Assembly (NCBI RefSeq): GCF_902459465.1
Contig: NC_047078.1
Span: forward strand, 8,494,001-8,558,000
Source: Asterias rubens
Lineage: Eukaryota
Length of the DNA: 64,000 nucleotides
Reading direction: 5' to 3'
In this document: positions 31,351 through 64,000 of the stretch, piece by piece
Position numbering within the stretch: position 1 is the first letter of the stretch
Layout of the letters: every line of letters begins with the position of its first letter
Notes under the pieces: generated by a model
Told to the model about the DNA's origin: nothing
What the model saw: only the letters and a program-made list of their open reading frames with translations
Database searches by the model: none
Position numbers and translations under genes: made by a program

Positions 31351-31717
31351 GACACTGGACACTATTAGTATTATTGTCAAAGACCAGTTTTCTCACTTGG
31401 TGTATCTCAACATATGCATAGAATAACAAACTTGTTAGAATCTGAGTTCAATCGGTCGTCGAAGTTGCGAGATGAAAGAAATACACCCTTGTCATACGAA
31501 GTTGTTTGCTAGCATGATTTCGAGACCTCAAAATTCGAAATCTGAGGTCTCGAAATCAAATTCGTTGAAAATTACTTCTTTCTCGAAAACTACGTTACTT
31601 CACTAGAGGGAGCTATTCTAACTGTGTTATACTATCAACCTCTCCCCATTACTCATTACCAAGAAAGGTTTTAGGCTAATAATTATTTTGAATAATTACC
31701 AATAGTGTCCACTGCCT
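31351..31717. mobile_element. Kolobok-like MITE (family 1)
   Basis: TTAA-flanked; TIR ...CCAATAGTGTCCACTGCCT. Confidence 0.7.
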
Positions 31718-34700: not shown

Positions 34701-35171
34701 AAATTTGTTAAGCAGTACTTTCTGCTAAACAGTTTTATGTAATTGAGACCAGCATGCAAAAATATAATGTTTACAGCATGGCAGTACTTGTATTTCTCCT
34801 CAGTAGGTCCCTGATGGATACATTTGTGATAGACCTTTATCACTCTGTCACCATCTTGTCCATGTTCCCTGTTTCCGAACAGTAATGAATGCTAACATTA
34901 AGTGCGCAAACATGGCACCAGACTATTATTTAGCCTCAGTTTGGTTACAAAGAGCTGGAATGGAGTAAAATCAAGATGGCAACACCGTGGTAAAGGTCTA
35001 TTAACAAAGACCAGTGTTCTAACTACGTGTATCACATCATTTTGCATAGGCTGATAACAAACCTGCAAAACCTGCATCCTTGTTGCAAAAATTTGTGTGC
35101 TTTCAGATGGCTAAAATGCTTTATAGGCCTGAAGTCTAGGTATTAAGAGTTTTGCCCTTCCGTAGTAATAA

Positions 35172-35303
35172 TAGGCCGTGTCCGAAACGGCGACTTCGGC
35201 TACAGCTACGGCTAGATCGCGCGCGTCTGCTATCCTTTAACACTGGTAGACGCGCTGATCTAGACGTAGCTGTAGCCGAAGTCGTCGTTTCGGACACGGC
35301 CTA
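35172..35303. mobile_element. 132-bp hairpin MITE
   Basis: TAGGCCGTGTCCGAAACGGCGACTTCGGCTACAGCTACG with a near-perfect inverted copy; TA at both ends. Confidence 0.8.
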
Positions 35304-35312
35304 AGACACAAT

Positions 35313-35502
35313 TGTAGAGTCTTACTAGACATACGGATTAAACCAATACTATAGACGAATTCAATCTTATGTGCATCAACATGTGTCTTTATTCCGTTCC
35401 TCGGTTTTCCACCCCTTTTCCATGTACTCTTACACGAGGCCAACTCATTTGCATAAATGTATAACATTACATGTATTACAGTGTGATCACGTGAACACTA
35501 CA
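35313..35502 (-). repeat. 3' LTR (190 bp)
   Basis: TGTAG...CTACA inverted ends, AATAAA inside, PPT immediately upstream; its first 25 nt recur at 38704-38728. Confidence 0.85.
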
Positions 35503-35823
35503 TTCTCTCCTTTCTTAAAATAACAAACCCTTAGTTAAACTGGAAAGTAAACGCACAGTATCAAACTTTAACTTTTAACAACATCATCAAGTTTAAACAA
35601 TGTTAACCATTTAACAAAACAATTGTGTTTCTTTTAAAATACAGTAGTCCATACTATGACTTATCATATTAGACTTAGACCGGGATATTGCAAATTTTAT
35701 GTTGGTGAGATATTTAAAACTATCCCAGAAAACATTTGTTACTTATCTTGTATCTCCTCTGGTAAACAATATTTACCCTTACATCCTGTGCTTACTGCTT
35801 ATAACACATACTTTAAGTTTTAT

Positions 35824-38690: not shown

Positions 38691-39124
38691 ACCATCAACT
38701 TTAACAGTGTGATCACGTGAACACTACAACAATCAAGGCCCGAGGAGGTGTTTTGATTTAACCTTTGACCTCCGCCAAAAAAGGGGGTCAGGGTACCACA
38801 CAGAAAGTACATACAGAGATGATAGAACACTGCAAGAAAACACCTCACCATGGATCAAATATCGCTTCACACTGAGAAAGGCGTGATTTTGTTTCTGAGC
38901 GATTTCATTGCGTTACTCATGTCCTTAACAATAAACATTGTTTTAACATTATTGCTACTATTATAAGCGTACACAAAGTGTCATGTCGCGATAGTTTATA
39001 GACACTGTGGACTCGGTTCTTGCAGTGTTGGAGTGGCCGGCCTTGGTTGTATCATTTTAATCATAATTTGCTTCACTTAATCCAGGAGTATAAATGGGAG
39101 GGTCTCCCTCGCTGCCTTGAGTTA

Positions 39125-40223
39125 ATTGCCAAAAACCAGTCTTCTCACTTAGTTTATATATCTCAACTATGTACAAAATAACAAACCTGTGAAAATTTTG
39201 AACTCAATTGGTCGTCGAAGTTGCGAGATAATAATGGAAGAAATAACACCCTATTTCTGAGGTCTCGAAATCAAATTCAAATATTTTTTAGTGGAAAATT
39301 ACCTCTTTCTCAAAAACTACGTTACTTCAGAGGGAGCCGTTTCTCACAATGTTTTATACTATCAACAGCTCTCCATTACTCGTTGAGTCGTTAGGCAAGT
39401 AAGGTTTCATGCTAATAATTATTTTGAGTAATTTTTAAAGGGACACGTTGCCTTGGATCGGTCGAGTTGGTCTTTGAAAAGCGTTTGTAACCGTTTGTTA
39501 TAAAACTCATTTGGTTAGAAAGATGTTGTAAAAGTAGAATACAATGATGCACACAAACATGCCTCGAAGTTCCACGGTTTTCCTTTTACCTCGTCGACTA
39601 ACACGGTCGGCCATTTATGGGAGTCAAATAATTTTTAACTCCCATAAATGGCCGACCGTGTTTGTTCGCAAAGTAAAAGGAAAACCACGCAATTTCGAGG
39701 CAAATTTGTGTGGATCATTGTGTTCTAGTTTTAAAACATCAACCATATGCATTTTATAACAAACGGTTACGCTTTTTATAGACCAACCCGTCCGATCCAA
39801 GGCAACGTGTTCCTTTAAAGGCAGTGGACACTGTTGGTAATTACTCAAAATAATTATTAGCATAAAACCTTTCTAGGTGACAAGTAATGGGGAGAGGTTG
39901 GTGGTATAAAACATTGTGAGAAACAGCTCCCTCTGAAGTGCCATAGTTTTGGAGAAAGAAGTAATTTTCCACAAATTTGATTTCGAGACCTCAAGTTTAG
40001 AACTTGAGGTCTCGAAATCAACCATCTAAACGCACACAACTTCGTGTGACAAGGGTGTTTTCTTCTTTCATTATTATCTCGCAACTTTGATGACCGATTG
40101 AGCTCAAATTTTCACAGGTTTGTTATTTTATGCATAGTTGAGATACACCAACTGTGAAGGCTAGTCTTTGACAATTACCAATAGTGTCCACTGCCTTTAA
40201 TACCAATAGTGTCCACTGCCTTA
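39125..40223. mobile_element. Stack of three Kolobok-like MITEs
   Basis: A family-1 host is split in its right TIR by family 2 (39439-39814) plus family 1 (39819-40196); the host TIR resumes at 40201. Confidence 0.75.
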
Positions 40224-41574
40224 AACTTAAATTATGCAAAATACTTAACAATCTTATATACCATCCGGGTAATGGTTTGTTTTTTTGTCAATGTAGGTTT
40301 TCAAAATGTTCATAAATTGGAAAAAGAATTGCAATAAAAGTCACAGTATGTGAAAGTTTCGGCAGAAAATAGTTTGTCTATCTTGCTGAGAAAACTGGAA
40401 AAATCGTAACGGTATTCAATTAAATTAATATGCTAACCAGGTTGCAAGCCAAACTACAATGTCACATGTTGTGACTGGTATCCTGCTCATTTCTGCTTAG
40501 CAGATCGTTAATACTTTCTGATACCGGGTCCTGGTGTTAGTTGTTTGTGTGGGCTACTGTTGGTCGGTTGCCAGCCAACCTTAATTCCAATAGCAATAAT
40601 TTTCTTTTCTAATGTGGTTTTTGTACGAAGCACATGGGGTGTGTTCTCTCGTCGCTAGCCTTTCCGACCCTTAAAACGGGATAAACAGGTGAGATTTTCT
40701 CATTTTTAATGATCTCGAACAAAACCAAACGTTTGTAAACGACTCTTTGCTGCAATGTCGGTGTTTATTGGTGTTCGTGTGTTTCCGAAGGAGAGCAGGA
40801 GCAAACACATGCCGTTCATAACAGCACGAGACGCCATCACGATGTGGAGGGGAAATCACGCTCGCCACGAAATACCGTACATTAGATGTGCCGACTAAAC
40901 TTTAAACCAATATTGTGACAAACTTATAATAGTTGTTGTCCTTAATATTGTTTACTTCAAGTTTGTAATTGGCCAATTATACAAAATATCATAATATAAC
41001 ATTTTGGCCTGTAGCATGAAGGCAGAGGGCCTACGTTAGGATCACCAGATTTAAATTAAGGTTCGAAAATGTTTAAATTTGAGAAGTTTGTTTAGTATCA
41101 ATAAATTAAGGTCACATTAAATGTAAATCCACTTATGGAACAAAATGCATACCTAATGACTAAGAGGGAATTACATCATTGATAATTGTCTTGTATTGTT
41201 CGAGAAAATCTGGATTTTAGGATAAAATTTAATATATAACATGGTTCAAACGAACTGTTGACATATTTTTCCTTCTGTGTTTGCTGAAAAGAGAGCAAAT
41301 AATTATGAAATTCAAAAGTCAGAAAAAATGACAGGTTCAAACGACGATCAGCCGACCATCGTTTCAAAGCTAGAATTGAAATGTTCATTAAAATGAAATA
41401 ACACTCGCGAAACAACTTCGCTGGCAACCTGTAAATCAAAAATAATTATGTAATTTCATTCAAGTGAGTTATTTTGAATTAACTTGGAAGTACATTTTTT
41501 CATCCAAATCCATAATTATACTAGCTGCCAACATTTGCATCTTGTCATTTCGCTCCGGAGAATTTTGTACAAAG

Positions 41575-41870
41575 ACCAGGGAGATATTTAGAAACCTATT
41601 CAACACAACAGGGAAGATGTTTCCATAATATCAGGAAGATTTTAAATCATGTTCATCAGAACATGGACATATTATTTATTTTATTTTAAGTTTCTGCAGA
41701 ATCAGGAAGAGTTAAAGTTTGTTGAACAAAAATCAGGGAGTAAATTAGAAACACATTCACCACAACAGGGAAAATGTTTCCATTGATATCAGGGAGATGT
41801 TCAAAATGTGTTCATCAGGAAATGGACAGATTGGTTCATTTTCAGTTTCTGCAGAATCAGGGAGAGATGG
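41575..41870. repeat. Two diverged ~165-bp tandem copies
   Basis: CAGGGAG...CACAACAGGGAA(G/A)ATGTTTCCAT...GTTTCTGCAGAATCAGG, twice. Confidence 0.75.
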
Positions 41871-42139
41871 CTATACGTAGCTCTGTTCATACCTTTAGTT
41901 TGACAGCATTTCATCGGCTTTTCATACAATGTGATAGAGAAGGTGAACAATAGTTAGAATATATATTCACAAAAACAACTTTACTTGTTAAAAAAAACAA
42001 TTTTACGTTCCCTAATTTTGGGGCACCAAAACGGGCCAGGAACTTACACGGGAGTCCATAAGGCCATGCCCTCTGATGCACCTGATCCTATAGCCTTGGT
42101 GACCCTAAAAATTTCTCTTATATGACTCTTTAAGAAACT

Positions 42140-43944
42140 GGGGATTACTATTGTCAAAGACCAGTCTTCTCACTTGCTGTATCTCACATACGCATACAAT
42201 AACAAACCTGTGAAAATTTGAGCTCAATCAGTCATCAAAGTTGAAAGATAATAATGAAAACTACGTCACTTCAGGGGGAGCCTTTTCTCACAATGTTTTT
42301 TTTACTATCAACAGCTCTCCATTACTTGTAACCAAGTGAGGTTTTGTGCTAATAATTATTTTGAGTAAATACCAATAGTGTCCACAGCCTTTTAGACTTT
42401 CCAATGGGAGTACCCTTCGCAAAGTGAAAATTACCTTGCTTTGAGTGTCAGTTTGCACGAGTATAATATCTCAATATTGGCCTCTAAAAAAATGCCCCAT
42501 CCCCTTTGAAGCAGAACAGTTAAAAATGACAGGCCTACATTTTAAAGGGGAAGGTACACGTTTGGTAATTACTCAAAACAAATATTAACTTAAATACTGA
42601 CAAACTAGCATTGTAGAGCTGTTGAGAGTATAAAACATTGTGAGAAACGGCTCCCTCTGAAGTAGCATAGATTTAGAGAAAGGGGTAATTTCTAACTAAA
42701 ATAATAAAAGACTTCTTTAGCCAGAAGTCTTTTATTCGTCCAACAATGGTGTTTTTTCTCTAATCATTTTCTCGCAACTTCGATTACCAACTAAGCTCAA
42801 ATTTTCACAGGTTTGTTATTTTATGCTTACGTTGGGATACAACAAGTGAGAAGACTGGTCTTTGACAATTAAACGTGTACCTTCCCTTTAGAAGAGGACA
42901 AAAACAAAAATAAATCAGTCTAAAATTGTGTATGTTTATTTTGCTCATATCAACCATGGATGAAGTTGAAAAAACAAAACTTGATCCACGACATAACTAC
43001 TTGCGTTTGAGAGGCTAAACTTATGATTTTTACATTAAAGAATTGTATGTTGTACCTGCCTTTGTCTTCTACAAAAGGTGGTTATACAATAATACAAACA
43101 ATTCAATTCAATTATTTATTCATCATGCCAGCATGAAAATCATTAAAGCTCAGTTTGCACATACAAAATATTAAAATGTAAAAAATACACAATATTTTTA
43201 AGCGAGACAAAACAAAACTTGACAATAAGTGAAGGATTTAAATACGAAATCAAGATTACTATACTTATCGATAATTAATCATCAATACAGGGAAGTAGCC
43301 TAGTCAGTAGTCGATGATGTATTAAAGCCACGTCACCGACTTCCTTCATAAAACATTGATAACTCAAAACAACATTGGTTGATTGTTTTTGAAATTGCGG
43401 ACATGACATGACTTGATTTGGAATGATTTGTAAATGCAGCTGGTTGTTTATCACATTTTTGTGTGGGTTGCGTGGGTTGTTGCCACCCAACCTTGAAGGC
43501 ACTGGACACGTTTGGTAACTGTTATAAAGACCACTATTCTCACTTGGTGTATCCCAACATATGCATCAAATAACAAACCTGTGAAAATTTTGGCTCAATC
43601 TGTCATCAAATGTGCAAGAGAATAATGACAGAAAACACTCTTGTTGCATTACTTTGTGCGCTTTCGGATGCATAATAAAATGCGTCAGCTGAAGTCTTTT
43701 AATTATTATTTGAAATGATTTTTGGGGTTAAACAAAGAATTGACTAGAGTGGGATTCGAACCAACGACCTCCGGATTAACGTATAATTATTATTTGAGTG
43801 AGAAATTACCTCTTTCTCAAAAAACTAATTCAGAGGGAGCCGTTTCTCACAATCTTTTACTCAACAGCTCTCCATTGCTCGTATACCAAGTAAGTGTTTA
43901 TGCTAACAATTATTTTGGGTAATGACCAATAGTTTCCAGTGCCT
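42140..43944. mobile_element. Cluster of Kolobok-like MITEs (~42140-42395, 42545-42888, 43497-43944) with a LINE-like tail near 43100-43490
   Basis: Family internal motifs; (TTGAA)n-type tail on the minus strand. Confidence 0.6.
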
Positions 43945-46900
43945 TTAAACCCACGTGAACCATCATAGCCATTTCCGATTAGTGTGGGGTATGAAGCGCA
44001 TGGGGTTTGATCTCTCGGCGTCCATGTTGTCTCATTTGCCCGTTACCTCAGGTGAGTTTGTCACATTTTAAGTTGATCTCCAATAAAACAGAAATTAACA
44101 GTCGATCAATCAAAATATTATCAGCTGAAAGTTATGTAGAAAATAATAATAGTATTCATATCCAAAGCCAGTTTGAAATCACGAATCATAACGTTGTACG
44201 TACGACATTGGTCAAGAAATACATCAACCAAAAATAGTGGAATTTAAAAAAAGTTAAACATGAGCCAAGTTTGGGTTAATTTATGGTATTTTTTTCAACC
44301 ATGAGTTCATGGGGGAAAGAGAAATAACTGTAGGCCTAGCCAAAATGGGAAAACTTTGCACCATCAGTTCACATGAAAAGACGTCATTTTGGTTCGGACG
44401 GGGGCGAACGGTGGCAGACAAAATCCTCAAAAAGTTTCATTTTAAGCATTTTAATCCAAAGGAAATCCCCTGCTTTTATTTGAATTTTTCTCGACAGTAT
44501 TTTGTTATATCTAGGGATTTAATTGAAGTTGTTGTGTGCATGTGCCAAGGTCACAATGTCTTAACTGTTGAAGTGTAAGTTTTGTCAACTGTGTGGGCCG
44601 CCATTTTGTTTTTCATCACGGAGACCGCAGAGCACTGGCTCGCACGGACAAAAACACGCCGTTCAAAATCGCACGAGCCCCCACTAAGTGTTAAAAACAA
44701 ATCACGCTCGCTACCGAGTCCGAAGCTAGTATGCAATAACGTTCGTTACTTATCATCTGTATCTGTTTTAAAACCAAAAGTGCAGGCTTCATATACTTCA
44801 GCAAACATAAAAAGCACAAATCAATTATAACATTATAATAGTTGACAAGTTACATATACAAGGTTGTCATCAAGCCTTCGAGAATTAGACCATCAAACCC
44901 TAGTTTTTGCATTTATACCATCCGTCTTTTTGGTTGATAAGTTGTTTGCAACAGCTTATTTTGTTTTCCCAAGTTAAAAACTGCATGGAGTCTACGGGAG
45001 GAGGAGGACATGAGACAATATTGAGCCAACTTCAAGTTATTATTAACAAGGTGTTTGAAACCATTATGTACAACAAACCATCAGTGTCAGTTGAGGATAC
45101 TGACAATTATTTAATCTTTTAAATTAAAACCAGAAATCAACCACACAAGATAGGATTCATGTTCGACTAAAAATCAAACACAAAAATGCATTAAAAAAAT
45201 ACGTTTCTCGCTAAATATTATTCAAAAAGACAAAAAAGGTATCAACTTCTCCCCCATTACTCGCAACCAAGTATTGCTAATAATTATTTTGAGTAATTAC
45301 CAATAGTGTCCACTGCCTTTAAATTGCCCAAAGAACTTTGTACAGTTTTCTCACCAGTGGTGTAAACAAAAACTGTTTACGAAAAAAGAAATGTTCAGTG
45401 TATCACGGTAACTATGATGAAGCCCACAAAGTCTGAAGGGGCGTTGTTAGTCACCCGAAACACCAAAAACACAAAACCATATTGTTAAATATAATTTAAA
45501 TGGAACACAGTCAAAGAATAAGCCACTTATAGTAAACAACATGAAATATTTTGTATAGGCTATTATACGATCTAATAAACAAGGATCTAGGATCCAGCGG
45601 CGTAGCTAAAAAAAAAAGGGCAAATACTATGATGGAATAATTAAAGCTCCATACAACATCACTTATTACTATCCAGAAATACATAGCCCCAAATCAACAG
45701 CAAAAGGGAACGTATTTGCAAAAAGCCACGAATTGAATGAAAATTGAAATATTGCTTTTATTTAGACATTATAACAAAGGTGAACCAAATGCCTAAAAAG
45801 CTAAAACTAAAATAGTACCCTGGTGAGCTCAAGTATCTAATCATGAACGCCCATGACTGGCAAACAATTTTACCACAAAAACAGCAACAAAAACTCAAAT
45901 ACAGCCACTACAAATAGAATTTAAAAAAAAAAGCTAAAAAGAAATAACGTTATAAAGAACCAGTATCATATGACCACAACACTTATAGCAATAATCAATA
46001 TTCAAAAACTAATCATGAACTACATAGTTAAGGAATTTGAATAAGAAAAAAATTAATAAACACGAGCGAACAAAACGTTACTATAGTTTGTTAAAGTGTT
46101 CCAAAATGTACCCCACGAAAAAAAAACTCAAAATCCAAATCTAATGAAAACTGACATAATTATGTTCTACGCCACCAAAGTCAATCTTACACACAACATA
46201 ATTTTATATCTCAGTGGCCATGCAACAATCCTTCATTGCGTTCTTTAAACAAAAATCCAACATTATCCATGCAAATGAAGAAAGCTAACAATACCTTGAA
46301 ACATTATGAAAATGTTGCGCAGTAACTTCACGGATGAAGAAAAACATCACGTTCATCAGAGAAAAAACCCCTAAAGATCCACTGCTGAAGAAACGTCATG
46401 ATAAAACAAGAAAATCAACTTCTGCAAGAACTAAATTTCTTCTGGCTCACCTACAAACTTTGACCAACACAACGTCTAAAGCAATGACAGTTGAAACATT
46501 ATGTACGTTAAGTACAGCAATATTCTTCGAAAACAACCAGGCTGAAAGTCTAACAGACTTCAAATGGAGCATGCCAATATTAACAAACACATGAAAAATG
46601 TATCGGTTAATGTATAATGATAAGTTTATGGTTGATTTCTGGATAAGGGGAAATCCCAGATGTGAGAAATAGAGGGGGAGGGGGGGCACACGGCTCGAAC
46701 CTCCATTCACAATGCCCTTACATGGCTATATACACTTTCAGGAAATGGCTTTCAGATTTTTTTAAGAATCTAGGAGTATTGCAAACAATAAGTCCGCAAA
46801 TATTTGATTTGAATTATAAAACCCCGCGTTCTGAGAAAGTGAGGGTACTGGTTTTACAACATCCATGTTTAGATTTTTGAGGGTAGTGAACCTGTGTCCT

Positions 46901-46989
46901 TTATTATGCCGTCTCTGGTATATTTGTTTTGATTTCAATGTTTTGAACATCTTTGCTTGCGATATTTTTTTCACAGGATTAGGGGGAAT

Positions 46990-49900
46990 ACTGTGACAGT
47001 GCTAACACACATCGGTGTATGGGTAAAAATATATATTTTGTGTAGGCCTATATATATTTTTTGATGTATCCCAACGTACGAATAAAATAACAAATCTGTG
47101 AAAATTTGGAACCAATATTGACCATCGAAGTTGCAAGAGAAACAAAAGAAAAGAAAAAACCCTTGTCGCACAAAATTGGGTGCTTTTAAGATGCAATGCT
47201 TCAGCTGAAACGGTCTTTGAGTGAAACTACCTCTAACTCAAAAACTATGTTACCTCAGAGAGCTGTTTCTCATATCAACAGCTCTCCGTTGCTATATTAC
47301 CGAGTACGTTTTTACAATAACAATTATTTTGAGTATACCAATAGTGTTCAGTGCCTTTAAATTGTGTTTGTGCGGAAGGAGAGCTATCATAGGTATTTTT
47401 TCTTGGTTTTCTGTTGACAAACTTCCGGGCATTTTCCTGGTCGTTGCGCTTCAATTGTCGAACAATATAGACATGTTTTGGCAATTAGGTCGCCCACAAC
47501 CATGACCGTCATATATAAATACATGACCGAGTGAGAAAATAGAGTTTACTGTTGCAAACAACTTACCAACCAAAAGAACCGAGGGTTAATAATGCAGACA
47601 AATAGCAATGGCCTGACGTTTCGACCCTAGCAGAGTCTTTCTCGAAGGCAAATGACAACACAACAAACATGAATAAGTCATGTCAATCTGTACTGTTTAT
47701 TGTTGTTGTTTTTGGCTTCTATGTTTCAATAAAGCTGGGTGGATGTTTTTGGTTTTAGGATAAGCCCGGTTCATACTTCCTGCCAATGCTGAGCTCTACA
47801 AAATTGGGCCCTGATTTTTGCCTAGTTGGTGGAAGTGCACTTTGCAAAATGAAAATGGCTTTTCCCTTTTAGTACTTCTTTCTGTATCAACTAAATGTTG
47901 CTTTTGTATTTACTTCACATCTCAAAGCGCATAATATAGAGACTTCTCTGTGATTGTGATATGCGCTATAAAAAAATTGTTCATTTTTTTTTTTTTTTAA
48001 GATGAAATTTCAAGCCATGTTTGTGCCAATAAAAAGTGCATGTTACAAAGAAACACAAGGCTTCGGTTTCAATTGTAAACTTATCCTGAAACCCACGGTA
48101 CCAACCTGTATTTCTATGTCTGGGGATTCCAATCTATATGCAATATTCAGCAGACGCGAATAACCAACCAAAGACAGCTGTTGTAAGGTTCAACGTTCAC
48201 GCAGCTTTGCCACAACATTCCCATCACGGACTTACTAAACATGGCCAGCGCCTTTAAAGGCACTCGGATAATATTGGTAATTACTCAAAATAATTATAAA
48301 CATAAAACCTCACTTGGTAACGAGTAATGGGGAGAGGTTGATGGTATAAAACATTGTGAGAAACGGCTCCCTCTGAAGTAACGTAGTTTTCGAGAAAGAA
48401 GTAATTTTCCATCAAAAATTTGATTTCGAGACCTCAGATTTATAATTTGAGGTCTCGAAATCAACCATCTAAACGAACACAACTTCGTGTAACAAGGGTG
48501 TTTTTTCTTTCATATCTTGCAACTCCGACGACCAATCGAGCTCAAATTTTCACAGGTTTGTTATTTTATGCATATGTTGAGACACACCAAGTGAGAAGAC
48601 TGTTCTTTGACAATTACCAATAGTGTCCAGAGTCTTTAAAGGCACTTTGACACTATTGGTAATTACTCTAAATAATTGTTATAGCATAACAAATTACTTG
48701 GTGTAACAAGCAATGGAGATATGTTGATAGTTTACAAAATTGTGAGAAACGGCTCCCTCTGAAGTGACATAGTTTTTGAGAAAGGTAATTTCTCCCTCAA
48801 ATAAAAAAATACTTCGGCTGAAGCCTTTTATTATGCATCTGAAAGCACACAATGTTGTGCAACAAGGTGTGTTTTCTTTCGTTATTCCCTCGCAACTTCG
48901 ATGACCAAATGAGTCCAAATTTTCACAGGTTTGTTTTTATGCACTTGTTGAGATACAGCAAGAGAGAATACTGGTCTTTGACAATTACCAAACTTGTCCA
49001 ATGTCTTTAAAACAATTTCACACAGCATCAACCACGACTAACTAACTCCTGCTTCCAAAGCGTAACACTAGAGGTCGCCTGTTGCAATTCTATCTTGACA
49101 TGACCTTTATGTTCTTTCTTTTTTGCAACGCAAGAATTTTCTGTGTCCACCAAGCAAACTGTTGGACTTGTCGCAACTTTAGGTGTTGGGGTGGGGTGGG
49201 GGTCATGGTTCATAATATGTACATCCACATGTAAATTTAAAGTCTAATCATGGCTTAATTTCATAGAGCTGCGCTTAAGCAGCAAATGTTGCTTAACAAG
49301 TTTCTGCTTAGTAGAAATTAGCAGGATAGGCCTACCAGTCACAAATTGTACATGGGACATGGTCGTTTGGTTGGTAACCTTATTCTAGTCTAGTGATATG
49401 ATACTGATCTAGATCTGCCAAGGTCGTGGGTTCGAATCCCACCGAGTAATATTTGTTCACAGAACTCGTGAGAAATTTAAAAGTATATAGTGCTGTACCA
49501 CACATTGGTGTAAATGGGTAAATCCAAAATGAATATAATTTTATGCTGAGCATCAGACATAAGCAGGGTAGCTGGTAACCTTATTCTGGTAAGCAAGTTT
49601 TTGTGCTTAGCTTATTTTTGTGCTCAAACCGCTCCATGGAATTTGGCCCAGAACAATAATGATTACTATTGGTGACATTCAGCAGAGCCAACACGGAAGT
49701 CGACTTACAGATCATTTCCGTTTGTTTTTTCTATGTGAATGTTGTATTACATGAATAGATTGTGTGTTTGTTTTCCCATCAAGGGAACTCAGCACACTCC
49801 CACAAGGTGGAAATAAACACCAAGCCGGCAACAGGTCTAGGGTTATGAATTTCACAAATCAAAAAATAGACGAAAATATTCAGAAGTCATTGTGACATCA

Positions 49901-50785
49901 GCAGTTAGCTTGGTAGGATTCGAACAAGGGGATATAAACACCAAGCTGGCAACAGCCAATCTTTCGCATACAAAGGCATTGGTTAAATGTATTTTGATCA
50001 TGAATTGCACAACTCAACAAAATTGTGATTCAGTTAACAAGACGAAGATATTTATTCATATAGTCATTGTGAAATCAGCGGTTAGTTTGGTAGGATTTGA
50101 ACCCACAACCTTGAAATGGCAAGTCCTGCTGTCTAACCACTGAACAAAGATAATAACAACATTTTGGTATAAGCTTACAACACCTTCCGATAGCATACAT
50201 CATTATGAGAAACATTTCACTTGGAAGATTGTAAATGCAGTAATAAAAAATAAAAAAAATATTCACAGATTAGTGTTATTGAACATCTACATTTTATATA
50301 GAATTAAAATAATCGAACGGTTCCAAAAACCAAATGTAAACTTTGCCAGATAGTTCGATTTGTAATTATTACAGTACCCATATGCAGGGTAATTGTAGTC
50401 AAAAGTAGACTGTACAACAACATCACTATTGGTTATTATTCAAAATTATATTATTAGCATAAAACCTTTCTTGGTGACGAGTAATGAGGAGAGGTTGATA
50501 GTATCAAACAATGTGAGAAACGGCTCCTTCTGAAGTGCCATAGTTTTCGAGAAAGAAGTAATTTTCCACGTATTTGATTTCGAGACCTCAAATTTAGAAC
50601 TTGAGGTCTCGAAATCAACCATCTAAACGCACACAACTTCGTGTGACAAGGGTGTTTTTTTCTTCCATTATTATCTCGCAAGTTCGATGACCGATTGAGC
50701 TCAAATTTTCACCGGTTTGTTATGTTATGCTTATGTTGAGATACACCAACTAGTCTTTGACAATTACCAACAGTGTCCACTGCCT
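46990..50785. mobile_element. Kolobok-like MITE copies at ~46990-47356, 48258-48635, 48640-49006, 50425-50785
   Basis: Shared TIR and internal sequence; most have TTAA flanks. Confidence 0.65.
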
Positions 50786-51420
50786 TTAAGAAAAGTACAT
50801 CCTATTTTGTTTTAACATCACCCAAAAGGGGGTTCCCCACTATTCATCGAAAGTCCCCCTGAAGCAAGTCAGTTGCAACAGTTTACGCGGGAGCCCTCGT
50901 AGCTGAGTGGTATGTCGCAATGCCACGTCCTAACACAGCGCATCCCTGGGTACGAGTGTAATCACACACACTGATGCCAGTGATTATAACATGGTACGGA
51001 AACACAGGGATTGTATAATAAGTAATAGCAACCATGATTTTCAGAGGCTCAGTTGTGAAGTCAGTGTTCTAGGACAGGGTGTTGTGTAGTCTTGAGTCAA
51101 GGGGTCATGTTGATGTCGCAGACAATTTGTTTTAAAAACATTTTAGTTTTGTGAAACTTTTTTGTTTTTATGATGTCAACCTTCGTTAAAGGTAAGACCT
51201 ATGGTTTTAAAAATCTTTGTTTGTTTGTTTTTATAAAATGTTTATAATTATTAATTTGTTATCACTTTTTAATAGCGTTGTTTTTGTGATGTTTACATCC
51301 AATTAAATGGCCTGAAGTTTGAAACTGTTTGTATAAAACGGTCATAATTTTATATTTTTAATAGCGTTGTTGTTTTTGCTATTTACATTGACTCAAATTA
51401 TCTGTTTGTCAATAAACTAA

Positions 51421-52609: not shown

Positions 52610-55185
52610 AGGCAGTGGACACTATTGGTAAATACTCAAAATAATTATTGGCATAAAACAACTTCGTGTGAGAAGGGTGGTTTTTTTCTTTCATTATTAT
52701 CACGCAAGTTCGATTACCAATTGAGCTCGAATTTTCACATCAGGTTTGTTATTTTATGCATGTGTTGAGATACACCACCTTGAAGGCTAGTCTTTGACAA
52801 TTACCAATAGTGTCCACTGCCTTTAAGCAGCTTCAGTTCTGTGTATGGCCCAAAGCGGTTTAGCAGAAAATACTGCCAACCAAAATTGACTGGTGCACCA
52901 GTCACACCAAATTGTAAACAAACTTTACTGTAACCTGTTTCTGTTAAGCAATACTTTTCTTGGCTTAGCAAGTTTTTGTGCGTACGAGGCCTTATGAAAT
53001 TGGGCCATCAGGCCGTTTGCAACCCCCCCCCCCCCCCCATAAGGCATATCTTTTTATTTGAAACAATTCAATTTTATTGGTCCTACCATGGAGGATTTAT
53101 AATAATAATTATAGAAAAACGTTGCTTACAAAACATCTGTTCACGAGAGTACTTCTCAATGCTTAGTTGGTTGGTAAGCAGAAAATATTGTTTAATATTT
53201 TTCTGATCTGAGCAGGATCAGTCATAAATTGTACATTTTGTGACATGGTAATTTGGCTGGTATGTTTTGGTAAGCATATTATTTGTTGCGCCTATAGCTA
53301 TTTTTTGTTCTGAAGCAGCTCTGAAAGTAGGCCCTCATTGGTCAATTTCAGTACACAATATAATGCTCAAGTAAAAATGTGAACACAAGAAAAAACAAAC
53401 ATTCGACAAAAACAAACTACACAATATGTTTTTTCGGCTTTTGGCCCAAAACAAACATTTTGTTTCTACATCGATGTGTATATAAGCACTGTATACTGAG
53501 TACTTTCCCGAGTTATAAAACAAATCAACTGGCAAATCACTCTATGGGAGTCGAACCAAAGGCCTTTCAAATTAATTAAAGGCAGTGAACACTATTGGTA
53601 ATTACTCAAAATAATTTTTAGCATAACAACTTACTTGGTTACAAGTAATGGAGAGTTGTTGATAGTATAAAACATTGTGAGAAACGGCTCCCTCTGAAGT
53701 ATCGTAGTTTCGAGAAAGAAGTAAATCTCCACGAATTTGATTTCGATACCTCAGATTTAGAATTTGAGGTCTCGAAATCTCGCATCTGAAAGCACACGAC
53801 TTCGTGTAAACAAGGGTGTTTTTTCTTTCATTATTATCTCGCAACATCGACAACCAATTGAGCTCAAATTTTCACAGGTTTGTTATTTTATACATATGTT
53901 GAGATACAGCAAGTGAGAAGACTGGTCTTCGACAATTACCAATAGTGTCCAGGATCTTTAAAGCCATTGGACCCTTTCGGTAAACAGTGTTGTCCAAGGC
54001 CCACACTTTGTGTACCACAACTTCTATATCAAATAACAAACCTGTGAAAATTTAGGCTCAATCGGTCATCGGAGTCGGGAGAAAACAACGGAAAAACCCA
54101 CCCTTGTTTCCGCGCGTTTCGCCGTGTCATGACAATTGTGTTTAAAATAAATCCGTAATTCTCGTCAACGAGAATTTATATTGTTTTGCTGTTTTCTCAA
54201 AAAGTAAAGCGTTTCATGGAATAATATTTCAAGAGAAGTCTTTCACCATTGCCTTCTGTAAACCCTCTAAGTTATTTGTAAATCTGTGAACTTTTTTTTT
54301 TCCAACTAGACAACCGAGTTAGAGCCTGTTCGAATCCTTTATTTTACTATTGAAACGCACTGGACAATATATACACATGTTGAGATGCACCAGTGCCTTT
54401 AAGAGATTCAGCCTTAGATATTAATCTTTAACCTTTAGAGAAAGGACGCTATTATGATATTATGGTTATTATTAATGAGGGATTTCCCTGCGTCAGAGCA
54501 ATGCATGACTATACAGGGGCCACAGGCACGTACTGAACGCGGCTCTTTGATCGATATCACATGATATGGGAATCCCCAAACATGTAAACAAAAAATTATG
54601 TTTGCGTCCAAGTTCCGAAAAAAAAGGGAAGCGTGTTTTTTTTTTTTTCAAACTTCGCCATTCTTGTTAAAATTTTAAACAACCATTGATATACACAATC
54701 ATGGAATCATCCTCCAATTGCAGACAAAACTCTTTGTCGGCAATTGCTTTCTTTACATGTCCCTGTGGTTCGCTTAGAAAATGTATCCATAGTCAGACCA
54801 TAGCACTTCAAAAGCATAGAGCAAGATATACTGGACATTGGTGACTACAAAAAAATAATTGTTAACGTATAGTTATGTGTTAAGCATGAATGGAGAACTC
54901 ATTGATGGTATAAAACACTTGTGAGAAACGACTCCCTCGGAAGTGTAGTTTTTTAGAAAGAGGTACTCACTCAAGAATATTTGTACATTCCAAGACTTCA
55001 TGCTTGAAACCTTTTACATCAGGCATCTGAAAGTTTGCAACAAGGGTGTTTTTGTATCTTCATTCTCTTGCAACTTTGATAACCAACTGAGCAACAAAAT
55101 TCACAGGTTTGTTATTTTGTGCATTTTTTGGGATACACCAAGTTGAAATACTGGTCTTGACAAAATTCGTGTCCAGTACCTTTAA
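52610..55185. mobile_element. Kolobok-like MITE copies at 52610-52822, 53580-53957, 53962-54398, ~54830-55185
   Basis: TTAA-flanked TIRs; the second and third copies share a TTAA. Confidence 0.65.
54479..54577. promoter_or_regulatory. Distal NF-kB site pair with an adjacent CRE/AP-1-like site
   Basis: GGGATTTCCC at 54479-54488, TGCGTCA at 54489-54495, GGGAATCCCC at 54568-54577. Confidence 0.5.
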
Positions 55186-56600
55186 AAAAGGCAGAGCATT
55201 GAATATAATTAATTACCGAATACCGGTAACAGAGTCAAACGCCCATGGCCACATCTAGCACTACACCCGGCCCGACAGTCGTCCCGCCCACAACCGACCC
55301 TGCCCTTGTGTGTGGCAAACAAGCAGACAGCAACAAGGCCATTAACAAATTAAAAAAATGTTTGGCGTTATCCTGTTGATCCTAAAGAATCAATCGTGTT
55401 TTTTTTCCATAGTACTTGACCTTCTTTCTCAGTCTCAGTCTTTTTTAAACACTAAAACAAGACTGTACAAACTGCTGATCAATACTAATAAATTTGTTTA
55501 GACTAAGGGTTTTCAAAATTACCGTATTTTCGTGTTTTATAATAATACTTGACATTGTGTCTGTTATTGTCATCATGTGTCGAGACATTTTGAGATATTT
55601 AGCTCTTGTGCACCACTGTGTAGAAAGATGTTGCCATATGGCATGATGTTTACTCGTACCTGTGTCCAGTGGTTTTTGAAACCGTTCGAGTTGTTTAAAT
55701 CATACAAATATACAACTATATAGGAACTAATAATGTGAACAATCATTCCAAAAGGTCGTAGGGTTTTTGAGTTATCGTTTAAAATAATCCGTAATTGGAA
55801 AACACAATCTGAGTAACATTTTTCAGATTCAAATTTTGGGGGATAACAACCTATTATTTGTTCTCTATAACCACATAAATTCAAAGTGAAATGATCTTCA
55901 AAATGCTCTATCGAAAGCTACTGTACTTATTACCAAGCAACTCTTTATTGTCATTAATTTTAAAGAAACACGTTGCCTTGGGTCGGTCGAGTTGGTCTTT
56001 GAAAAGCGTTCTGTGACCGTTTGTTATAAAATGCATTGGTTAGAAAGATGTTGTAAACGTTGAATACATTGATCTACACAAAATATGCCTCGAAATTGCG
56101 TGGTTTTTCTTTCACCTCGTCGGCTAACACGGTCGGCCATTATGGGAGTCAAATTTTTGACTGCCATAAATGGCCGACTGTGTTAGTTCGCGACGTAAAA
56201 GGAAAACCGTGCAATTTTGAGTAATACTTGTGTGGATCATTATATTCCACTTTTAAAACATCTTTCTAACCATATGCATTTTATAACAAACGGTCACAGA
56301 ACGCTTTCTATAGACCAACTCGTCCGATCCAATGCAACGTGTTCCTTTAAGAGTGATAACCAAACGTACCTTTCCTTTAAAGGCACTGGACATCTTTGAA
56401 AAGTGTCAAAGACCAGTTTCATTACCTGGTGTATCCCATAATATGCATAACTAAACAATTATTTTGAGAAGTAACCAATAGTGTCCGATGCCTTTAAATA
56501 TAAATAAAAAGTCCAGCCTACGACCCTAATATCTAGGTCCCATTACGCGGAACATAATTTAGTTTTTCACAGGCCTATATTAATTGTTCGTTAGAGACTT

Positions 56601-56636
56601 GGGGATTTCCAGTACACGTGAAAGTGGGGAATTCCC
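56601..56636 (+). promoter_or_regulatory. Proximal NF-kB / E-box / IRF-NF-kB composite module
   Basis: GGGGATTTCC, CACGTG, GTGAAAGTG and GGGGAATTCCC packed into 36 bp. Confidence 0.65.
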
Positions 56637-57187
56637 AGCGTTTAAAGATAACTGCGTCGATAAAATCCAACAATGTCCTTTGTGTTTCAGGGTCTTTGAA
56701 TTGTTTTTTTGTAAAGTAATTATATGGACTCCATAATCTGGTGTGTTAGTGCGTACAGGCCAACAGAAACAATTATTTGCCTTTATTAAACTAACAAATT
56801 AATAGCAAATAAATAAACACTGAAATAGGGGAAAGTAAAATTCAGGTTGACAGATGTAATGGTCATCATTTCAGAAATGAGGTACACAGGAAAATCCTTG
56901 TAATTTTAATATTTGTCCATTGAATTGTTATTTTAATAATAAAATCAAAAATTAACCGATTTTGTCTTTCAATAATTTTAATCAATGATAAAACAATTGC
57001 ATAAAGATCTTCACTGAAGTGTGTGTATGTACTTACCATCAACATAATTTATGTGTTTTCCAGGGACGCATGACTGCCAGTTGTTCTGGAATTCCCCACT
57101 TCTGAGTCTTGAATTGTTGTTCACTGTTCTCCAAGAAGACACATCGTCCATTTTCGGTTTGGATAGTTTGGTTGAGAAGGTGTCCGA

Positions 57188-59039
57188 ATGGAGTTGATGG
57201 TATCGGGTTTAGTCGTCACCCATAGCGGGGGAATGCGTGGTTCCGGCGGGGGGCTTCTAGCCATGATGGAGCCGATTAAACCAAACTCACTGCAGGAACA
57301 AAAGGTATTGTTTTATTTGTTTACTTATTTTTTTATTTTTTTTCGCAGGGGGAGTACAAAAGAAAGTTACTCGTTATCACGTATAGGGCATGGTGGTTTG
57401 GAACCACCCCCCTCCCGCCCCTCCTTGTGCCTTAACTGTGTGCTTGGAATCGTAGAGGGTTTTTATTTTCAAGGGTACCATCGAGCTGCTTAGCGGCCAA
57501 CTTTGTGCTTACTGTGTAATTTCTATTTCATAGAGATGCTGACGAAAAGTAAGCATACAAAAAGGCATGCTAACCTTCCGTTGCTTTACTGCACAAAACA
57601 ATGATCGCACAATGCAAACCAGTGAAATACGCTTACGCCTTAACAAATTTGTCTGCTATAGTTGCACGAAAACTTGCTTACCGTTAGCAGCTTTATATTT
57701 CATAGCACAGCAAAATTATGCTTATCAGAATAAGGTTACCAGCCAAACTACCATGGTACATGTACAGTTTGTGACTGGTATCCTGCTCATTTATTTTTAG
57801 AGGAAACCTGTTCAGCAAACTTTTCTTCTTATGAAGCTCTATAAATTTGAGCTATGTGAGTTAAGTACACAACCTGCTAAGTTAAGTAATACCTTGCTTA
57901 GCGAAATAGGCTATTATCCATCACTCTGTATATCCCAAATGAATAACAGTGTTTCGACTGCTATAGTGCCCCACTCACTTTTTGCTTAGCAAAGAAACTT
58001 GTTTAAGTAGCATTTTCTGCTAAGCAGCTTTATGAAACTGGACCCTGGGCCGTCTTTGTAGCTTTTAATAATACTGAAATATTTCCTCAGTTTGTATTGT
58101 CTACCAACGGGAAAACCGCAAGCAATACACTTTATTACTTTCAGTATCGACAGATACATGTAATACTATTCCAATCAAGTAAAAAACAAAATGGACTGAA
58201 CTGCTTCCCCTACCCATCCTGGTTTATCTTTATCTTCTATTTATATGAAGACATTCTGAACATGGATTGAAACGTCGAGTAGTCCTTGCTCACCAGTGAT
58301 TAAAGGGTATTTTAAATTGTTTGTTTTATTCTTCAGGTTTTGAAAAGTGAAATTAAAAGAGACAAGAACAGAGAGTCTTCAGCTCGGAGCAGACAGCGGA
58401 AGAAAGACGAAGATGCACATAACCAACAGGTACGTATAGTAGTTGAAGGAAAACAAAAACATGTATCATGTAAAGAGTTTATTTATTTATTTTTGTGTTT
58501 ATTTGGCAGTACAATTTTAAATTAGTAAATAATTATGTCAGGGCCATCGCCAAGACATGTGATACTTATTATTGTTTTACAAACACAGTGAACCAGATAT
58601 TTTTTTATAAGTTAGAATGCGGGCATTCAGGACAAAGACTATATAGGGGATATTCTAAATGTCTCGGACAATTCATTTGGGGACTTTATTTGTACCTCCA
58701 GAGGGTGCCCGGTTCCCATGCCCCACCCCCCTTTCTGGTTAACCCTTCCATGGACGTGTAAACTGTAAATCCTGAATTCTTGACCCATATTCTTTGGTAT
58801 TTTCTAATTTATAGGAGGTCATTCGGCTACAAATCGCAAACGAGGAACTTCGTAAAAGAGAAGAGATGTTACTCCAAGAAGGTAGAGATATTCTCAGTCA
58901 AGTTGATCCATCCTATTATGATAATCCGAGATGTTCCGGATGTCCTGAGGAAGTTGTTGAAACGGAACCTTGTGATGTTCCGTCACCTCCACATCTATCC
59001 ACCCCTCAAACACCACCGGATTTTATGGAATCCTCATAA
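57188..59039 (+). CDS. Small bZIP transcription factor (BATF/ATF3/Fos-like), 3 coding exons: 57188(or 57263)-57304, 58337-58429, 58815-59039
   Basis: All junctions are phase-0 GT-AG; basic region KRDKNRESSARSRQRKK (N-x7-R); heptad L-L-L-I zipper in register; 119-144 aa. Confidence 0.85.
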
Positions 59040-63922: not shown

Positions 63923-64000
63923 GTATGTGACATTTGGATACTTTTGTATCGAGGGTGTCCTTTTTTTGTAGTAGGTCTAAGGAGCAGCCAGCCCTGTTTG

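What the first reader, a model, noticed from the sequence alone, without database searches (positions are those of the whole stretch)
54479..57097. NF-kB site cluster with an IFN-beta-enhanceosome-like IRF/NF-kB composite driving a small bZIP gene
Five kB consensus sites lie within 2.6 kb (54479, 54568, 56601, 56627, 57088), and five more lie across the upstream desert (29367, 30337, 33024, 44461, 46648). A rough estimate is about 2 expected per window. Bases 56618-56635 read GTGAAAGTGGGGAATTCC, 17/18 identical to the human IFN-beta PRDI-PRDII junction GTGAAAGTGGGAAATTCC (quoted from memory). Invertebrates lack interferon genes, so this may be an ancient or convergent IRF+NF-kB switch wired to an AP-1-family regulator. 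Function is inferred from motifs only.
Basis: partly seen in the sequence, partly recalled or inferred. Interest (0 to 1): 0.75.

Follow-up and report, generated by a model that had tools for sequence, protein, structure and literature searches.

The report
Conserved NF-kB sites at starfish bZIP gene
A small DNA-binding regulator gene found only in starfish is preceded by an unusually dense set of docking sites for the immune switch NF-kB, and several of these sites have been kept in place across distantly related starfish, so the gene is a strong but untested candidate for an infection- or stress-induced regulator.

Summary
The window is Asterias rubens.

**Observation: confirmed.**
- kB loci number 13, against about 2.3 expected.
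- The 18-mer at 56618-56635 matches the published human IFN-beta PRDI/PRDII junction at 17 of 18 bases.

**New evidence: the sites are conserved.**
- The gene's orthologues in A. amurensis, Patiria miniata and Acanthaster planci carry the same enrichment: 20 kB loci in 30 kb upstream, against 1 in 36.7 kb of gene and downstream DNA.
- At least six sites align as orthologous islands in DNA that otherwise does not align between starfish superorders.
- One of these sites lies inside the 5'UTR.

**The gene.** It is a 144-aa bZIP with three coding exons, confirmed by RNA contigs. RefSeq calls it "C/EBP alpha-like". An exhaustive profile search finds clear relatives only in starfish.

**Interpretation: partly supported.**
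- A GAAAGT half-site abuts a promoter-proximal kB site in every species.
- No full ISRE, PRDIII or PRDIV/AP-1 element exists, so this is not an enhanceosome. A Blimp-1-type factor fits the half-site as well as an IRF does.
- AP-1 family membership is unproven.
- The transcription start is only partly resolved. An exon beginning just after the kB pair is in A. amurensis mRNA, but the main A. rubens 5' exon could not be placed.
- Inducibility is untested.

The scan had noted kB modules at other immune-type clusters of this genome.

The parts
56601..56610 (+). Proximal kB site 1 (GGGGATTTCC), the first of a tandem pair
   Evidence: Identical in A. amurensis at L001:9410. A tandem pair is also present in Patiria (L002:9547 and 9566) and Acanthaster (L007:9585 plus a near-kB about 9605).
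56618..56635 (+). 18-mer that matches the human IFN-beta PRDI/PRDII junction at 17/18. It comprises GTGAAAGT plus the kB core
   Evidence: PMC4743414. The E-box CACGTG at 56615-56620 overlaps it and is found only in Asterias.
56620..56625 (+). GAAAGT half-site abutting kB site 2; a candidate IRF-type or Blimp-1-type half-site
   Evidence: The 13-mer GAAAGTGGGGAAT is shared with Patiria L002:9541 and Acanthaster L007:9579. This composite accounts for all four exact 11-mers shared between the proximal promoters (three on the same strand, plus AAGTGGGGAAT again at Asterias site E in opposite orientation). GAAAGTG occurs once per promoter, apart from one extra copy in A. amurensis.
56626..56636 (+). 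Proximal kB site 2 (GGGGAATTCCC). It contains the palindrome GGGAATTCCC
   Evidence: GGGAATTCCC is the kB probe used for cnidarian NF-kB in PMC5700166.
56641..56647 (+). TATA-like TTTAAAG just 3' of the kB pair
   Evidence: Read from the sequence. It resembles the Patiria TATAAAGATGAC at L002:9646. It is not conserved in Acanthaster, and its role is inferred only.
56652..56845 (+). 5' non-coding exon; the start is approximate (56652-56671) and the donor is CAG|GT at 56845/56846
   Evidence: In A. amurensis run X3, depth equals 129 nt plus 47 nt at mRNA depth in this interval, and is zero in unique upstream and intron bins. Its contig has 198+2 nt 5' of exon 2. An A. rubens X6 contig ends exactly at 56845. 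This exon is not part of the abundant A. rubens mRNA in X1 and X2.
57064..57304 (+). Exon with the 5'UTR and the first 39 codons (ATG at 57188)
   Evidence: RNA contigs in four runs align from 57062, which is an AG ambiguity with the acceptor, and join 57304 to 58337. The N-terminus M-E/D-x-x-x-SGLVV is conserved in Patiria and Acanthaster.
57088..57097 (-). kB site E, inside the transcribed 5'UTR exon
   Evidence: Orthologous sites follow the same acceptor at Patiria L002:9888 and Acanthaster L007:9887.
58337..58429 (+). Coding exon for the bZIP basic region
   Evidence: Pfam bZIP_2 E 6e-6 and bZIP_1 E 8e-6. The splice joints appear in RNA contigs.
58815..59039 (+). Coding exon for the leucine zipper and C-terminal tail, ending in the stop codon. 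The 3'UTR runs on to at least 60399
   Evidence: RNA contigs cover 58813-60399.
54479..54488 (+). kB site A of the upstream pair, with the conserved flank TAATGA
   Evidence: It aligns with Patiria L002:9152 and Acanthaster L007:9190, and the columns TAATGAGGG are invariant. In A. amurensis the site is kept although a palindromic repeat copy is inserted a few bases 5' of it.
54568..54577 (+). kB site B of the upstream pair
   Evidence: It aligns with Patiria L002:9280 and Acanthaster L007:9329. The pair lies 2.1 kb from the proximal pair in Asterias, against about 0.3 kb in the other two. Most of the extra DNA is repeats.
46648..46672 (+). Distal kB site plus the conserved flank TGAGAAATAG, 10.5 kb upstream of the ATG
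   Evidence: It aligns with Patiria L002:3002 (7.0 kb upstream) and Acanthaster L007:3783 (6.2 kb upstream). Both the kB core and TGAGAAATA are invariant.
29367..50838 (.). Span holding the other distal kB sites: 29367, 30337, 33024, 44461 and 50828
   Evidence: All lie in single-copy DNA. Site 50828 is kept in A. amurensis at L001:3940. The rest could not be compared because the A. amurensis locus ends at window 47061.

Best explanation
The region is the control landscape of a small bZIP transcription-factor gene that is found only in starfish. The protein is 144 aa, and RefSeq names it 'C/EBP alpha-like'.

**Layout of the sites**
- A tandem pair lies just upstream of a 5' exon (56601 and 56626).
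- A second pair (54479 and 54568) was pushed 2 kb away by repeat insertions.
- One site lies inside the 5'UTR exon (57088).
- One lies 10.5 kb upstream (46648).
- Several more lie further out.
- Six of these positions are orthologous in Patiria and Acanthaster, so they are kept by selection.

**Proposed mechanism (inferred)**
1. On immune or stress signalling, the starfish NF-kB/Rel protein enters the nucleus and binds these sites. Many are GGGGA-type, p50-like half-sites.
2. Binding switches the bZIP gene on as a primary-response gene.
3. The bZIP then acts as a second-tier regulator, either amplifying or damping the response. NF-kB-induced C/EBP-delta, ATF3 and BATF do this in vertebrates.
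4. A conserved GAAAGT half-site next to one proximal kB site, and a conserved TGAGAAATAG next to the distal site, suggest partner factors. Their identity is open.

**Shown:** motif excess, orthologous conservation, gene structure and transcription.
**Inferred:** which protein binds, and that the gene is inducible.
For: **Motif excess**
- 13 loci against 2.3 expected in the window.

**Independent replication at the orthologues**
- Patiria: 8 loci against 1.1 expected; 20 strand hits against 2.28.
- Acanthaster: 7 loci against 1.3 expected; 16 strand hits against 1.56.
- A. amurensis keeps all five proximal sites.

**Position bias**
- 20 loci in 30 kb upstream against 1 in 36.7 kb of gene and downstream DNA, P about 1e-6.

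**Islands of conservation**
- Window and Patiria DNA do not align by blastn.
- Sites A, B and the proximal pair and the distal site align with invariant cores and flanks. Site E corresponds by shared flanks behind the same acceptor; MAFFT did not place its kB core in register.

**The sites are not repeat-borne**.

**The gene is real and expressed**
- Spliced RNA contigs occur in four runs.
- Orthologues of 46-50% identity share the basic region, the zipper and the terminal motifs.

**NF-kB specificity is ancient**
- Its DNA specificity is conserved from sponge and anemone to human p50 by protein-binding microarray (PMC5700166).

**Parallels elsewhere**
- In crown-of-thorns starfish, bZIPs and NF-kB are co-expressed in a stress module (PMC11093393).
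Against: - No expression data under immune challenge could be obtained, and no binding data exist.
- The abundant A. rubens mRNA contigs (runs X1, X2, X6) do not contain the exon that starts after the kB pair. They carry 0 or 42 nt of an unplaced 5' exon. In those samples the main start may therefore be elsewhere, and the proximal pair may act from an intron.
- The TATA-like box is not conserved in Acanthaster.
- kB-type decamers can also be bound by other Rel-homology proteins or by zinc-finger proteins.
- The gene is expressed in unchallenged samples at some level, so it is not strictly off at rest.
Confidence: 0.6

Rival explanations
1. The GTGAAAGT-plus-kB junction is a true IRF/NF-kB composite switch. 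It would be homologous to, or convergent with, PRDI-PRDII of IFN-beta, with an IRF and NF-kB binding side by side and acting together.
For: - 17/18 identity to the human junction.
- The 13-mer GAAAGTGGGGAAT is shared by Asterias, Patiria and Acanthaster.
- Patiria has the full IRF core AANNGAAA plus GT at that place.
- A second conserved GAAA-containing flank sits next to the distal kB site.
- IRF and NF-kB signalling are both present and respond to poly(I:C) in the sister phylum, and are reported for urchin larvae (PMC10210618).
Against: - It is a single half-site. No promoter has GAAANNGAAA, a second IRF pair, or a PRDIV, CRE or AP-1 site.
- Asterias and Acanthaster miss the AA of the IRF core.
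- MAFFT aligns the GAAAGT-flanked site of Patiria and Acanthaster with kB site 1 of Asterias, not site 2, so the junction may not be orthologous.
- A shared 6-nt flank among this many sites has a chance probability of roughly 0.004 to 0.1, depending on how the test is framed.
- An 8-nt exact flank match to one human element is expected by chance many times in a scan of this size.
Confidence: 0.18
2. The GAAAGTG element is a site for a Blimp-1/PRDM1-type zinc-finger repressor, or for another GAAAG-reading factor. That factor would gate or silence the kB-driven promoter. No IRF would be involved.
For: - The very PRDI probe that contains the human string is a Blimp-1 EMSA probe (PMC2212483).
- From my own knowledge, Blimp-1 binds as a monomer to a single (A/C)AG(T/C)GAAAG(T/C)(G/T) site. 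Asterias matches this at 10 of 11 positions.
- From my own knowledge, Blimp1/Krox is a major echinoderm regulator.
Against: - Patiria and Acanthaster match the Blimp-1 consensus less well (TAGAAAGTG).
- No binding data exist.
Confidence: 0.12
3. The decamers are real, selected sites, but a different factor reads them. Candidates are NFAT/NFAT5-type Rel-homology proteins or HIVEP/Schnurri-type zinc fingers. They would serve tissue-specific, osmotic or developmental control rather than an immune response.
For: - From my own knowledge, those families bind kB-like sequences.
- A search hit (PMC11476177) concerns TonEBP in IFN-beta expression and prints the enhancer string (not read in detail).
- The gene is transcribed in ordinary samples.
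Against: - Most sites are full 10-11-bp GGGGA...TCCCC palindromes. These fit NF-kB p50-type dimers better than the asymmetric NFAT5 motif.
- Earlier notes report kB modules at immune-type gene clusters of the same genome.
Confidence: 0.09
4. The cluster is a chance or compositional artefact, or it was carried in by repeats.
For: The window is repeat-rich. One decoy motif of 400 reached the observed count.
Against: - Shuffles and decoys both reject chance.
- The sites are in single-copy DNA.
- The same excess, and orthologous sites, appear in three genera.
Confidence: 0.01

Closest known systems
Tandem-kB primary-response promoters of vertebrates (TNFAIP3/A20, NFKBIA, HIV-1 LTR)
   Same: Two kB sites 8-15 bp apart lie close to a start site or 5' exon. 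Further kB sites are spread upstream and inside the transcribed region. In vertebrates such sites often sit on regulators of the same pathway. (The vertebrate details are from my own knowledge.)
   Different: The target here is a lineage-restricted bZIP. Neither inducibility nor binding has been shown. The main A. rubens start site is unresolved.
NF-kB to C/EBP-delta/ATF3 (and BATF) circuit of mammalian innate immunity
   Same: NF-kB would directly induce a small bZIP that then shapes the secondary response. [quoted passage not shown]
   Different: The starfish protein is not an orthologue of any of these. The exhaustive search gives only generic bZIP matches outside starfish. Its basic region reads NRESSARSR and lacks the C/EBP valine.
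Human IFN-beta enhanceosome (PRDIV-PRDIII-PRDI-PRDII)
   Same: A kB site has a GTGAAAGT element fused to its 5' side, 17/18 identical over the junction. The kB core has an AT-rich centre.
   Different: Only 18 of 57 bp are similar. There is no PRDIII, no PRDIV and no tandem IRF cores. A second kB site occupies the place of PRDIII. The target is a transcription factor, not a cytokine.
MHC class I enhancer A plus ISRE
   Same: From my own knowledge, the palindromic TGGGGATTCCCCA-type kB sequence seen at site B (Patiria L002:9280) equals the classical H-2K/MHC-I p50 site, which sits beside an IRF element.
   Different: No full ISRE is present here. The resemblance is recalled from memory and was not tested.
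Insect immune-gene promoters with clustered kB sites plus a partner motif (for example GATA)
   Same: Several Rel sites are combined with a short conserved neighbouring motif.
   Different: The partner motif differs, the phylum differs, and the target is a regulator rather than an effector peptide.

Membership tests
NF-kB/Rel-responsive cis-regulatory module | Statistically enriched matches to the kB consensus GGGRNWYYCC near the gene | tested here: met
   13 loci against 2.3 expected in the window. The three orthologous loci show the same excess.
NF-kB/Rel-responsive cis-regulatory module | Sites conserved in orthologous promoters | tested here: met
   Six orthologous positions are shared across Forcipulatida and Valvatida, in DNA that otherwise does not align.
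NF-kB/Rel-responsive cis-regulatory module | Occupancy by NF-kB/Rel and loss of induction when the sites are mutated | not testable with these tools
   This needs EMSA, ChIP and reporter assays. The only support is the conserved NF-kB specificity shown in PMC5700166.
NF-kB/Rel-responsive cis-regulatory module | Transcript induced by immune or stress stimuli | not tested
   Run metadata are coded and only one read-laying run was allowed. The supplements of PMC11093393 did not contain the gene's identifiers.
IFN-beta-type enhanceosome | kB site (PRDII) directly abutted by an IRF element (PRDI) | tested here: inconclusive
   GAAAGT abuts a kB site in all species. It is one half-site, and only Patiria has the full AANNGAAA core.
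IFN-beta-type enhanceosome | Second IRF pair (PRDIII), giving four tandem GAAA cores | tested here: not met
   No GAAANNGAAA occurs in the roughly 2-2.9 kb of promoter scanned in any species.
IFN-beta-type enhanceosome | ATF-2/c-Jun site (PRDIV) at fixed spacing | tested here: not met
   No TGACGTMA or TGASTCA occurs. The only CRE half-site, next to site A, is not conserved outside Asterias.
AP-1 superfamily bZIP (Fos/ATF3/JDP2/BATF/Jun) | Significant, family-specific sequence similarity of the bZIP domain | tested here: inconclusive
   - Profile against PDB: ATF4 2.6e-4, Jun 5e-3, Fos 0.045, C/EBP-beta 0.057.
- 27-30% identity to a JDP2/BATF fusion model, including a P-x-C motif after the zipper.
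AP-1 superfamily bZIP (Fos/ATF3/JDP2/BATF/Jun) | Intron between basic region and zipper at the Fos/ATF3/BATF position | not tested
   The starfish intron lies 12 residues after the invariant Arg, in phase 0. I recall the same position for Fos, ATF3 and BATF. The one vertebrate locus I tried returned no DNA.
C/EBP family (the RefSeq name) | C/EBP basic-region signature (N-x2-A-V-x2-S-R) and clear orthology | tested here: not met
   The basic region reads NRESSARSR. C/EBP-beta scores only E 0.06-0.12. No urchin or other non-starfish orthologue was found.

The most novel reading that the evidence does not exclude
The GAAAGT-kB junction would be a genuine IRF-plus-NF-kB composite, kept since the split of the two starfish superorders, or since the common ancestor with vertebrates. 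The two-key switch that fires IFN-beta in vertebrates would then predate interferons. Its original target would have been a transcription factor, and this orphan bZIP would be a hub of the ambulacrarian antiviral and antibacterial response.
Probability: 0.18. Interest if true: 0.75.

Novelty: new member of a known kind. Interest (0 to 1): 0.5.

Why it matters
- **An open question becomes testable.** What NF-kB and IRFs control in invertebrate deuterostomes that lack interferons is unresolved (PMC10210618). This locus offers a concrete, deeply conserved candidate target with mapped sites. These can be mutated in reporter constructs in Patiria larvae or probed by ChIP.
- **A possible reporter tool.** The compact tandem-kB promoter could serve as a native NF-kB reporter for echinoderm immunology.
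- **A link to other loci in this genome.** Earlier notes of this scan report kB plus bZIP-like half-site modules at immune-type gene clusters of the same genome. The starfish-only bZIP is an obvious suspect for the factor that reads the second half of those modules. I did not test this.

Tried and rejected
1. **First TSS model, rejected.** I had proposed exon 1 at 56669-56710, with TTTAAAG at -28 and the 42 extra nt of the contigs. All contigs carry AG before exon 2, and that exon would end in TT.
2. **Main A. rubens 5' exon, not placed.** The 42 nt are not in the unique bins of 54400-57061.
3. **More species from metagenomes, nothing gained.** A scan for the 17-mer composite returned 120 contigs. 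The only ones resembling the promoters are high-GC bacterial repeats.
4. **ENA metagenome fragments, no new species.** The fragments carrying pieces of the protein (L003-L006) are A. rubens DNA, 99.7-99.9% identical to the window.
5. **Expression evidence from the literature, none found.** No paper holds the gene's LOC or XP identifiers. The supplements of the crown-of-thorns paper lack them.
6. **Intron-position test against a vertebrate JDP2/BATF locus, no result.** The locus returned no DNA. PMC2724284 gives only a rough exon layout.
7. **Family assignment, no decision.**
   - ESM Atlas returned generic small bZIPs.
   - The 1.84-billion-protein profile search found only starfish below 1e-10.
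   - The names of the next hits are uninformative.
8. **Other distal sites.** Orthology of 50828 and 44461 with the Patiria and Acanthaster distal sites was not supported.
9. **Rfam.** Nothing in the window.


Full report
**Identity of the window and the gene**

The window is Asterias rubens. The 144-aa protein spliced from three coding exons is identical in sequence to RefSeq XP_033641034 to XP_033641037, named 'CCAAT/enhancer-binding protein alpha-like'.
- The coding exons are 57188-57304, 58337-58429 and 58815-59039.
- The middle exon carries a bZIP basic region: Pfam bZIP_2 E 6e-6 and bZIP_1 E 8e-6.
- The last exon carries four zipper heptads and a tail.
- Logan contigs of four runs that hold the spliced mRNA (three flagged RNA, one of unknown type) join 57304 to 58337 and 58429 to 58815. 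They continue through a 3'UTR to at least 60399.

**The observation**

- Strand hits number 21, against 3.46 +/- 2.12 in dinucleotide shuffles.
- As distinct loci they number 13, against 2.34 for 400 column-permuted decoys scanned on the real sequence (P about 1e-6).
- The five 'desert' sites are enriched by themselves (5 against 0.68 expected).
- Apart from 10753 the motifs are not covered by repeats.
- The upstream 'desert' itself is full of repeats and holds a broken Ty3/Gypsy-type element at 35.8-38.4 kb.
- The 18-mer at 56618-56635 is as quoted. The human string is printed in PMC4743414, so the 17/18 match is correct. The similarity ends there. Where human DNA has PRDIII and PRDIV, the starfish has a second kB site.

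**Comparative test**

Homology search found orthologues in three other species:

| Species | Identity | Length |
|---|---|---|
| A. amurensis | 95% | 144 aa |
| Patiria miniata | 46% | 197 aa |
| Acanthaster planci | 50% | 153 aa |

Their loci were fetched with 10-kb flanks. By the NCBI lineage, Asterias belongs to Forcipulatacea and the other two genera to Valvatacea.

Results:
- A. amurensis keeps all five proximal sites.
- Patiria has 20 strand hits against 2.28 expected, and all eight loci lie upstream of the ATG.
- Acanthaster has 16 strand hits against 1.56 expected.
- Pooling the three independent lineages gives 20 loci in 30 kb upstream against 1 in 36.7 kb of gene and downstream DNA (P about 1e-6).
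- blastn finds no alignment between window and Patiria DNA around the gene. Short islands do align:

| Island | Asterias | Patiria | Acanthaster | Call |
|---|---|---|---|---|
| Site A, flank TAATGA | 54479 | 9152 | 9190 | 55 |
| Site B | 54568 | 9280 | 9329 | 55 |
| Tandem proximal pair | 56601 + 56626 | 9547 + 9566 | 9585 + about 9605 | 56 |
| Site E, in the 5'UTR exon just after a conserved acceptor | 57088 | 9888 | 9887 | 19, 37, 76 (MAFFT, did not register the core) |
| Distal site, flank TGAGAAATAG | 46648 | 3002 | 3783 | 77 |

In Asterias the A/B pair lies 2.1 kb from the proximal pair, against about 0.3 kb in the other genera. The extra DNA is mostly repeats, including a 411-bp palindromic element at 55950-56360.

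**The IRF claim**

What speaks for it:
- The composite GAAAGTGGGGAAT accounts for all four exact 11-mers shared between the proximal promoters of Asterias and the two Valvatida. Three are on the same strand; the fourth is AAGTGGGGAAT again, at Asterias site E in opposite orientation.
- GAAAGTG occurs once per promoter, apart from one extra copy in A. amurensis. The copy shared by all species touches a kB site.

What speaks against it:
- No promoter has GAAANNGAAA or a CRE or AP-1 site. Only Patiria has the full AANNGAAA core.
- MAFFT pairs the GAAAGT-flanked site of the Valvatida with kB site 1 of Asterias (flank TTAGAGACTT), not with site 2. The junction may therefore have moved or arisen twice.
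- The same human probe is a Blimp-1 probe (PMC2212483), so a Blimp-1-type reader is an equal candidate.

My conclusion is that a partner half-site is conserved. 'Enhanceosome-like' overstates what the sequence shows.

**The start site**

- All contigs align from 57062. They therefore carry AG before the true exon start at 57064, so the upstream exon ends in AG.
- That fits the donor CAG|GT at 56845/56846. It rejects my earlier idea of an exon ending at 56710.
- In A. amurensis run X3 the mRNA contig has 198+2 nt upstream of exon 2. Depth in 56600-56999 equals 129 plus 47 nt at mRNA depth, and unique upstream and intron bins are empty.
- A genome-collinear exon would start near 56652. That is 16-35 nt after kB site 2.
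- In A. rubens runs X1, X2 and X6 the abundant contig has 0 or 42 nt upstream, and depth in 56600-56999 is about zero. The main 5' exon in those samples is therefore elsewhere and could not be placed.
- A low-depth X6 contig ends exactly at 56845, which suggests minor use of that donor.
- RefSeq lists four A. rubens and three A. amurensis accessions for the one protein, which suggests several transcript (5'UTR) variants.

**What kind of bZIP**

- An exhaustive profile search of 1.84 billion representatives finds only the three starfish clusters below 1e-10. Everything else is generic, with E above 5e-6.
- Against solved structures the profile's best hits are ATF4 (2.6e-4), Jun, Fos and C/EBP-beta.
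- The basic region NRESSARSR lacks the C/EBP signature.
- BLAST to a fish JDP2/BATF model gives 27-30% identity, including a P-x-C motif after the zipper.
- From memory, the intron between the basic region and the zipper sits where Fos, ATF3 and BATF have theirs. I could not test this.
- I treat the protein as a starfish-restricted orphan bZIP.

**Mechanism and context**

- NF-kB DNA specificity is conserved from sponges and anemones to human p50. GGGAATTCCC, the core at 56627, is a standard probe (PMC5700166).
- The most likely reading is a Rel/NF-kB-driven primary-response gene whose product acts as a second-tier regulator.
- Known parallels:
  - A bZIP and NF-kB stress module exists in crown-of-thorns starfish (PMC11093393).
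  - A shared NF-kB/IRF circuit has been proposed for deuterostomes (PMC10210618).
- Earlier notes of this scan report kB modules at a deaminase cluster and a methyltransferase cluster of the same genome. I did not check these leads.

Noticed in passing
window 55950-56360: A 411-bp palindromic, MITE-like element. Its arms are 87% complementary. Other copies lie at 23087-23481 and 39435-39818, and it is very abundant in RNA-run contigs. A. amurensis has an extra copy inserted a few bases 5' of kB site A, and the site survives.
   Followed up: partly
window 35824-38356 (-): A broken Ty3/Gypsy-type retroelement. Reverse transcriptase, RNase H and integrase domains are spread over three separate ORFs in different frames. 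I described it only.
   Followed up: partly
window 57070-57105 (+): An 11-codon upstream ORF in the 5'UTR exon that overlaps kB site E. It is present in both Asterias species. Patiria and Acanthaster have no ATG in the corresponding exon part.
   Followed up: partly
P0004 residues 1-10 and 99-113; alignment A1: Two motifs outside the bZIP domain are conserved in all starfish orthologues: the N-terminal M-E/D-x-x-x-S-G-L-V-V, and D-P-x-x-x-x-x-P-x-C-x-G-C after the zipper. Their function is unknown.
   Followed up: no
window 46663-46672; L002:3015-3024; L007:3796-3805: TGAGAAATA(G/C) lies 3-5 nt from the distal kB site and is invariant across the three genera. It is a second candidate partner motif, and the factor that reads it is unknown.
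   Followed up: partly
window 56615-56620: A perfect E-box/G-box, CACGTG, lies between the two proximal kB sites in both Asterias species and is absent in Patiria and Acanthaster. The bZIP's own basic region (NRES...) resembles ACGT-core binders, so autoregulation is conceivable. This is pure speculation.
   Followed up: no
window 2616-3329 (-) and 63742-63930 (+): A C2H2 zinc-finger ORF lies near the left end. At the right end is the start of a gene that, in A. amurensis, is called as a 521-aa protein with zinc-finger and FOXP-CC hits. In Acanthaster the downstream neighbour is instead a PRDM-type gene on the other strand.
   Followed up: no
L064:3780-3900, L099:4130-4250, L072:380-480 (metagenome contigs): High-GC bacterial contigs carry repeat arrays built from GGGGAATCCCC-like units and include the exact 17-mer composite. 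They are unrelated to the starfish locus, and they show that the string alone is not diagnostic.
   Followed up: partly
window 15789-15941: An assembly gap of 153 N. I left it untouched.
   Followed up: no
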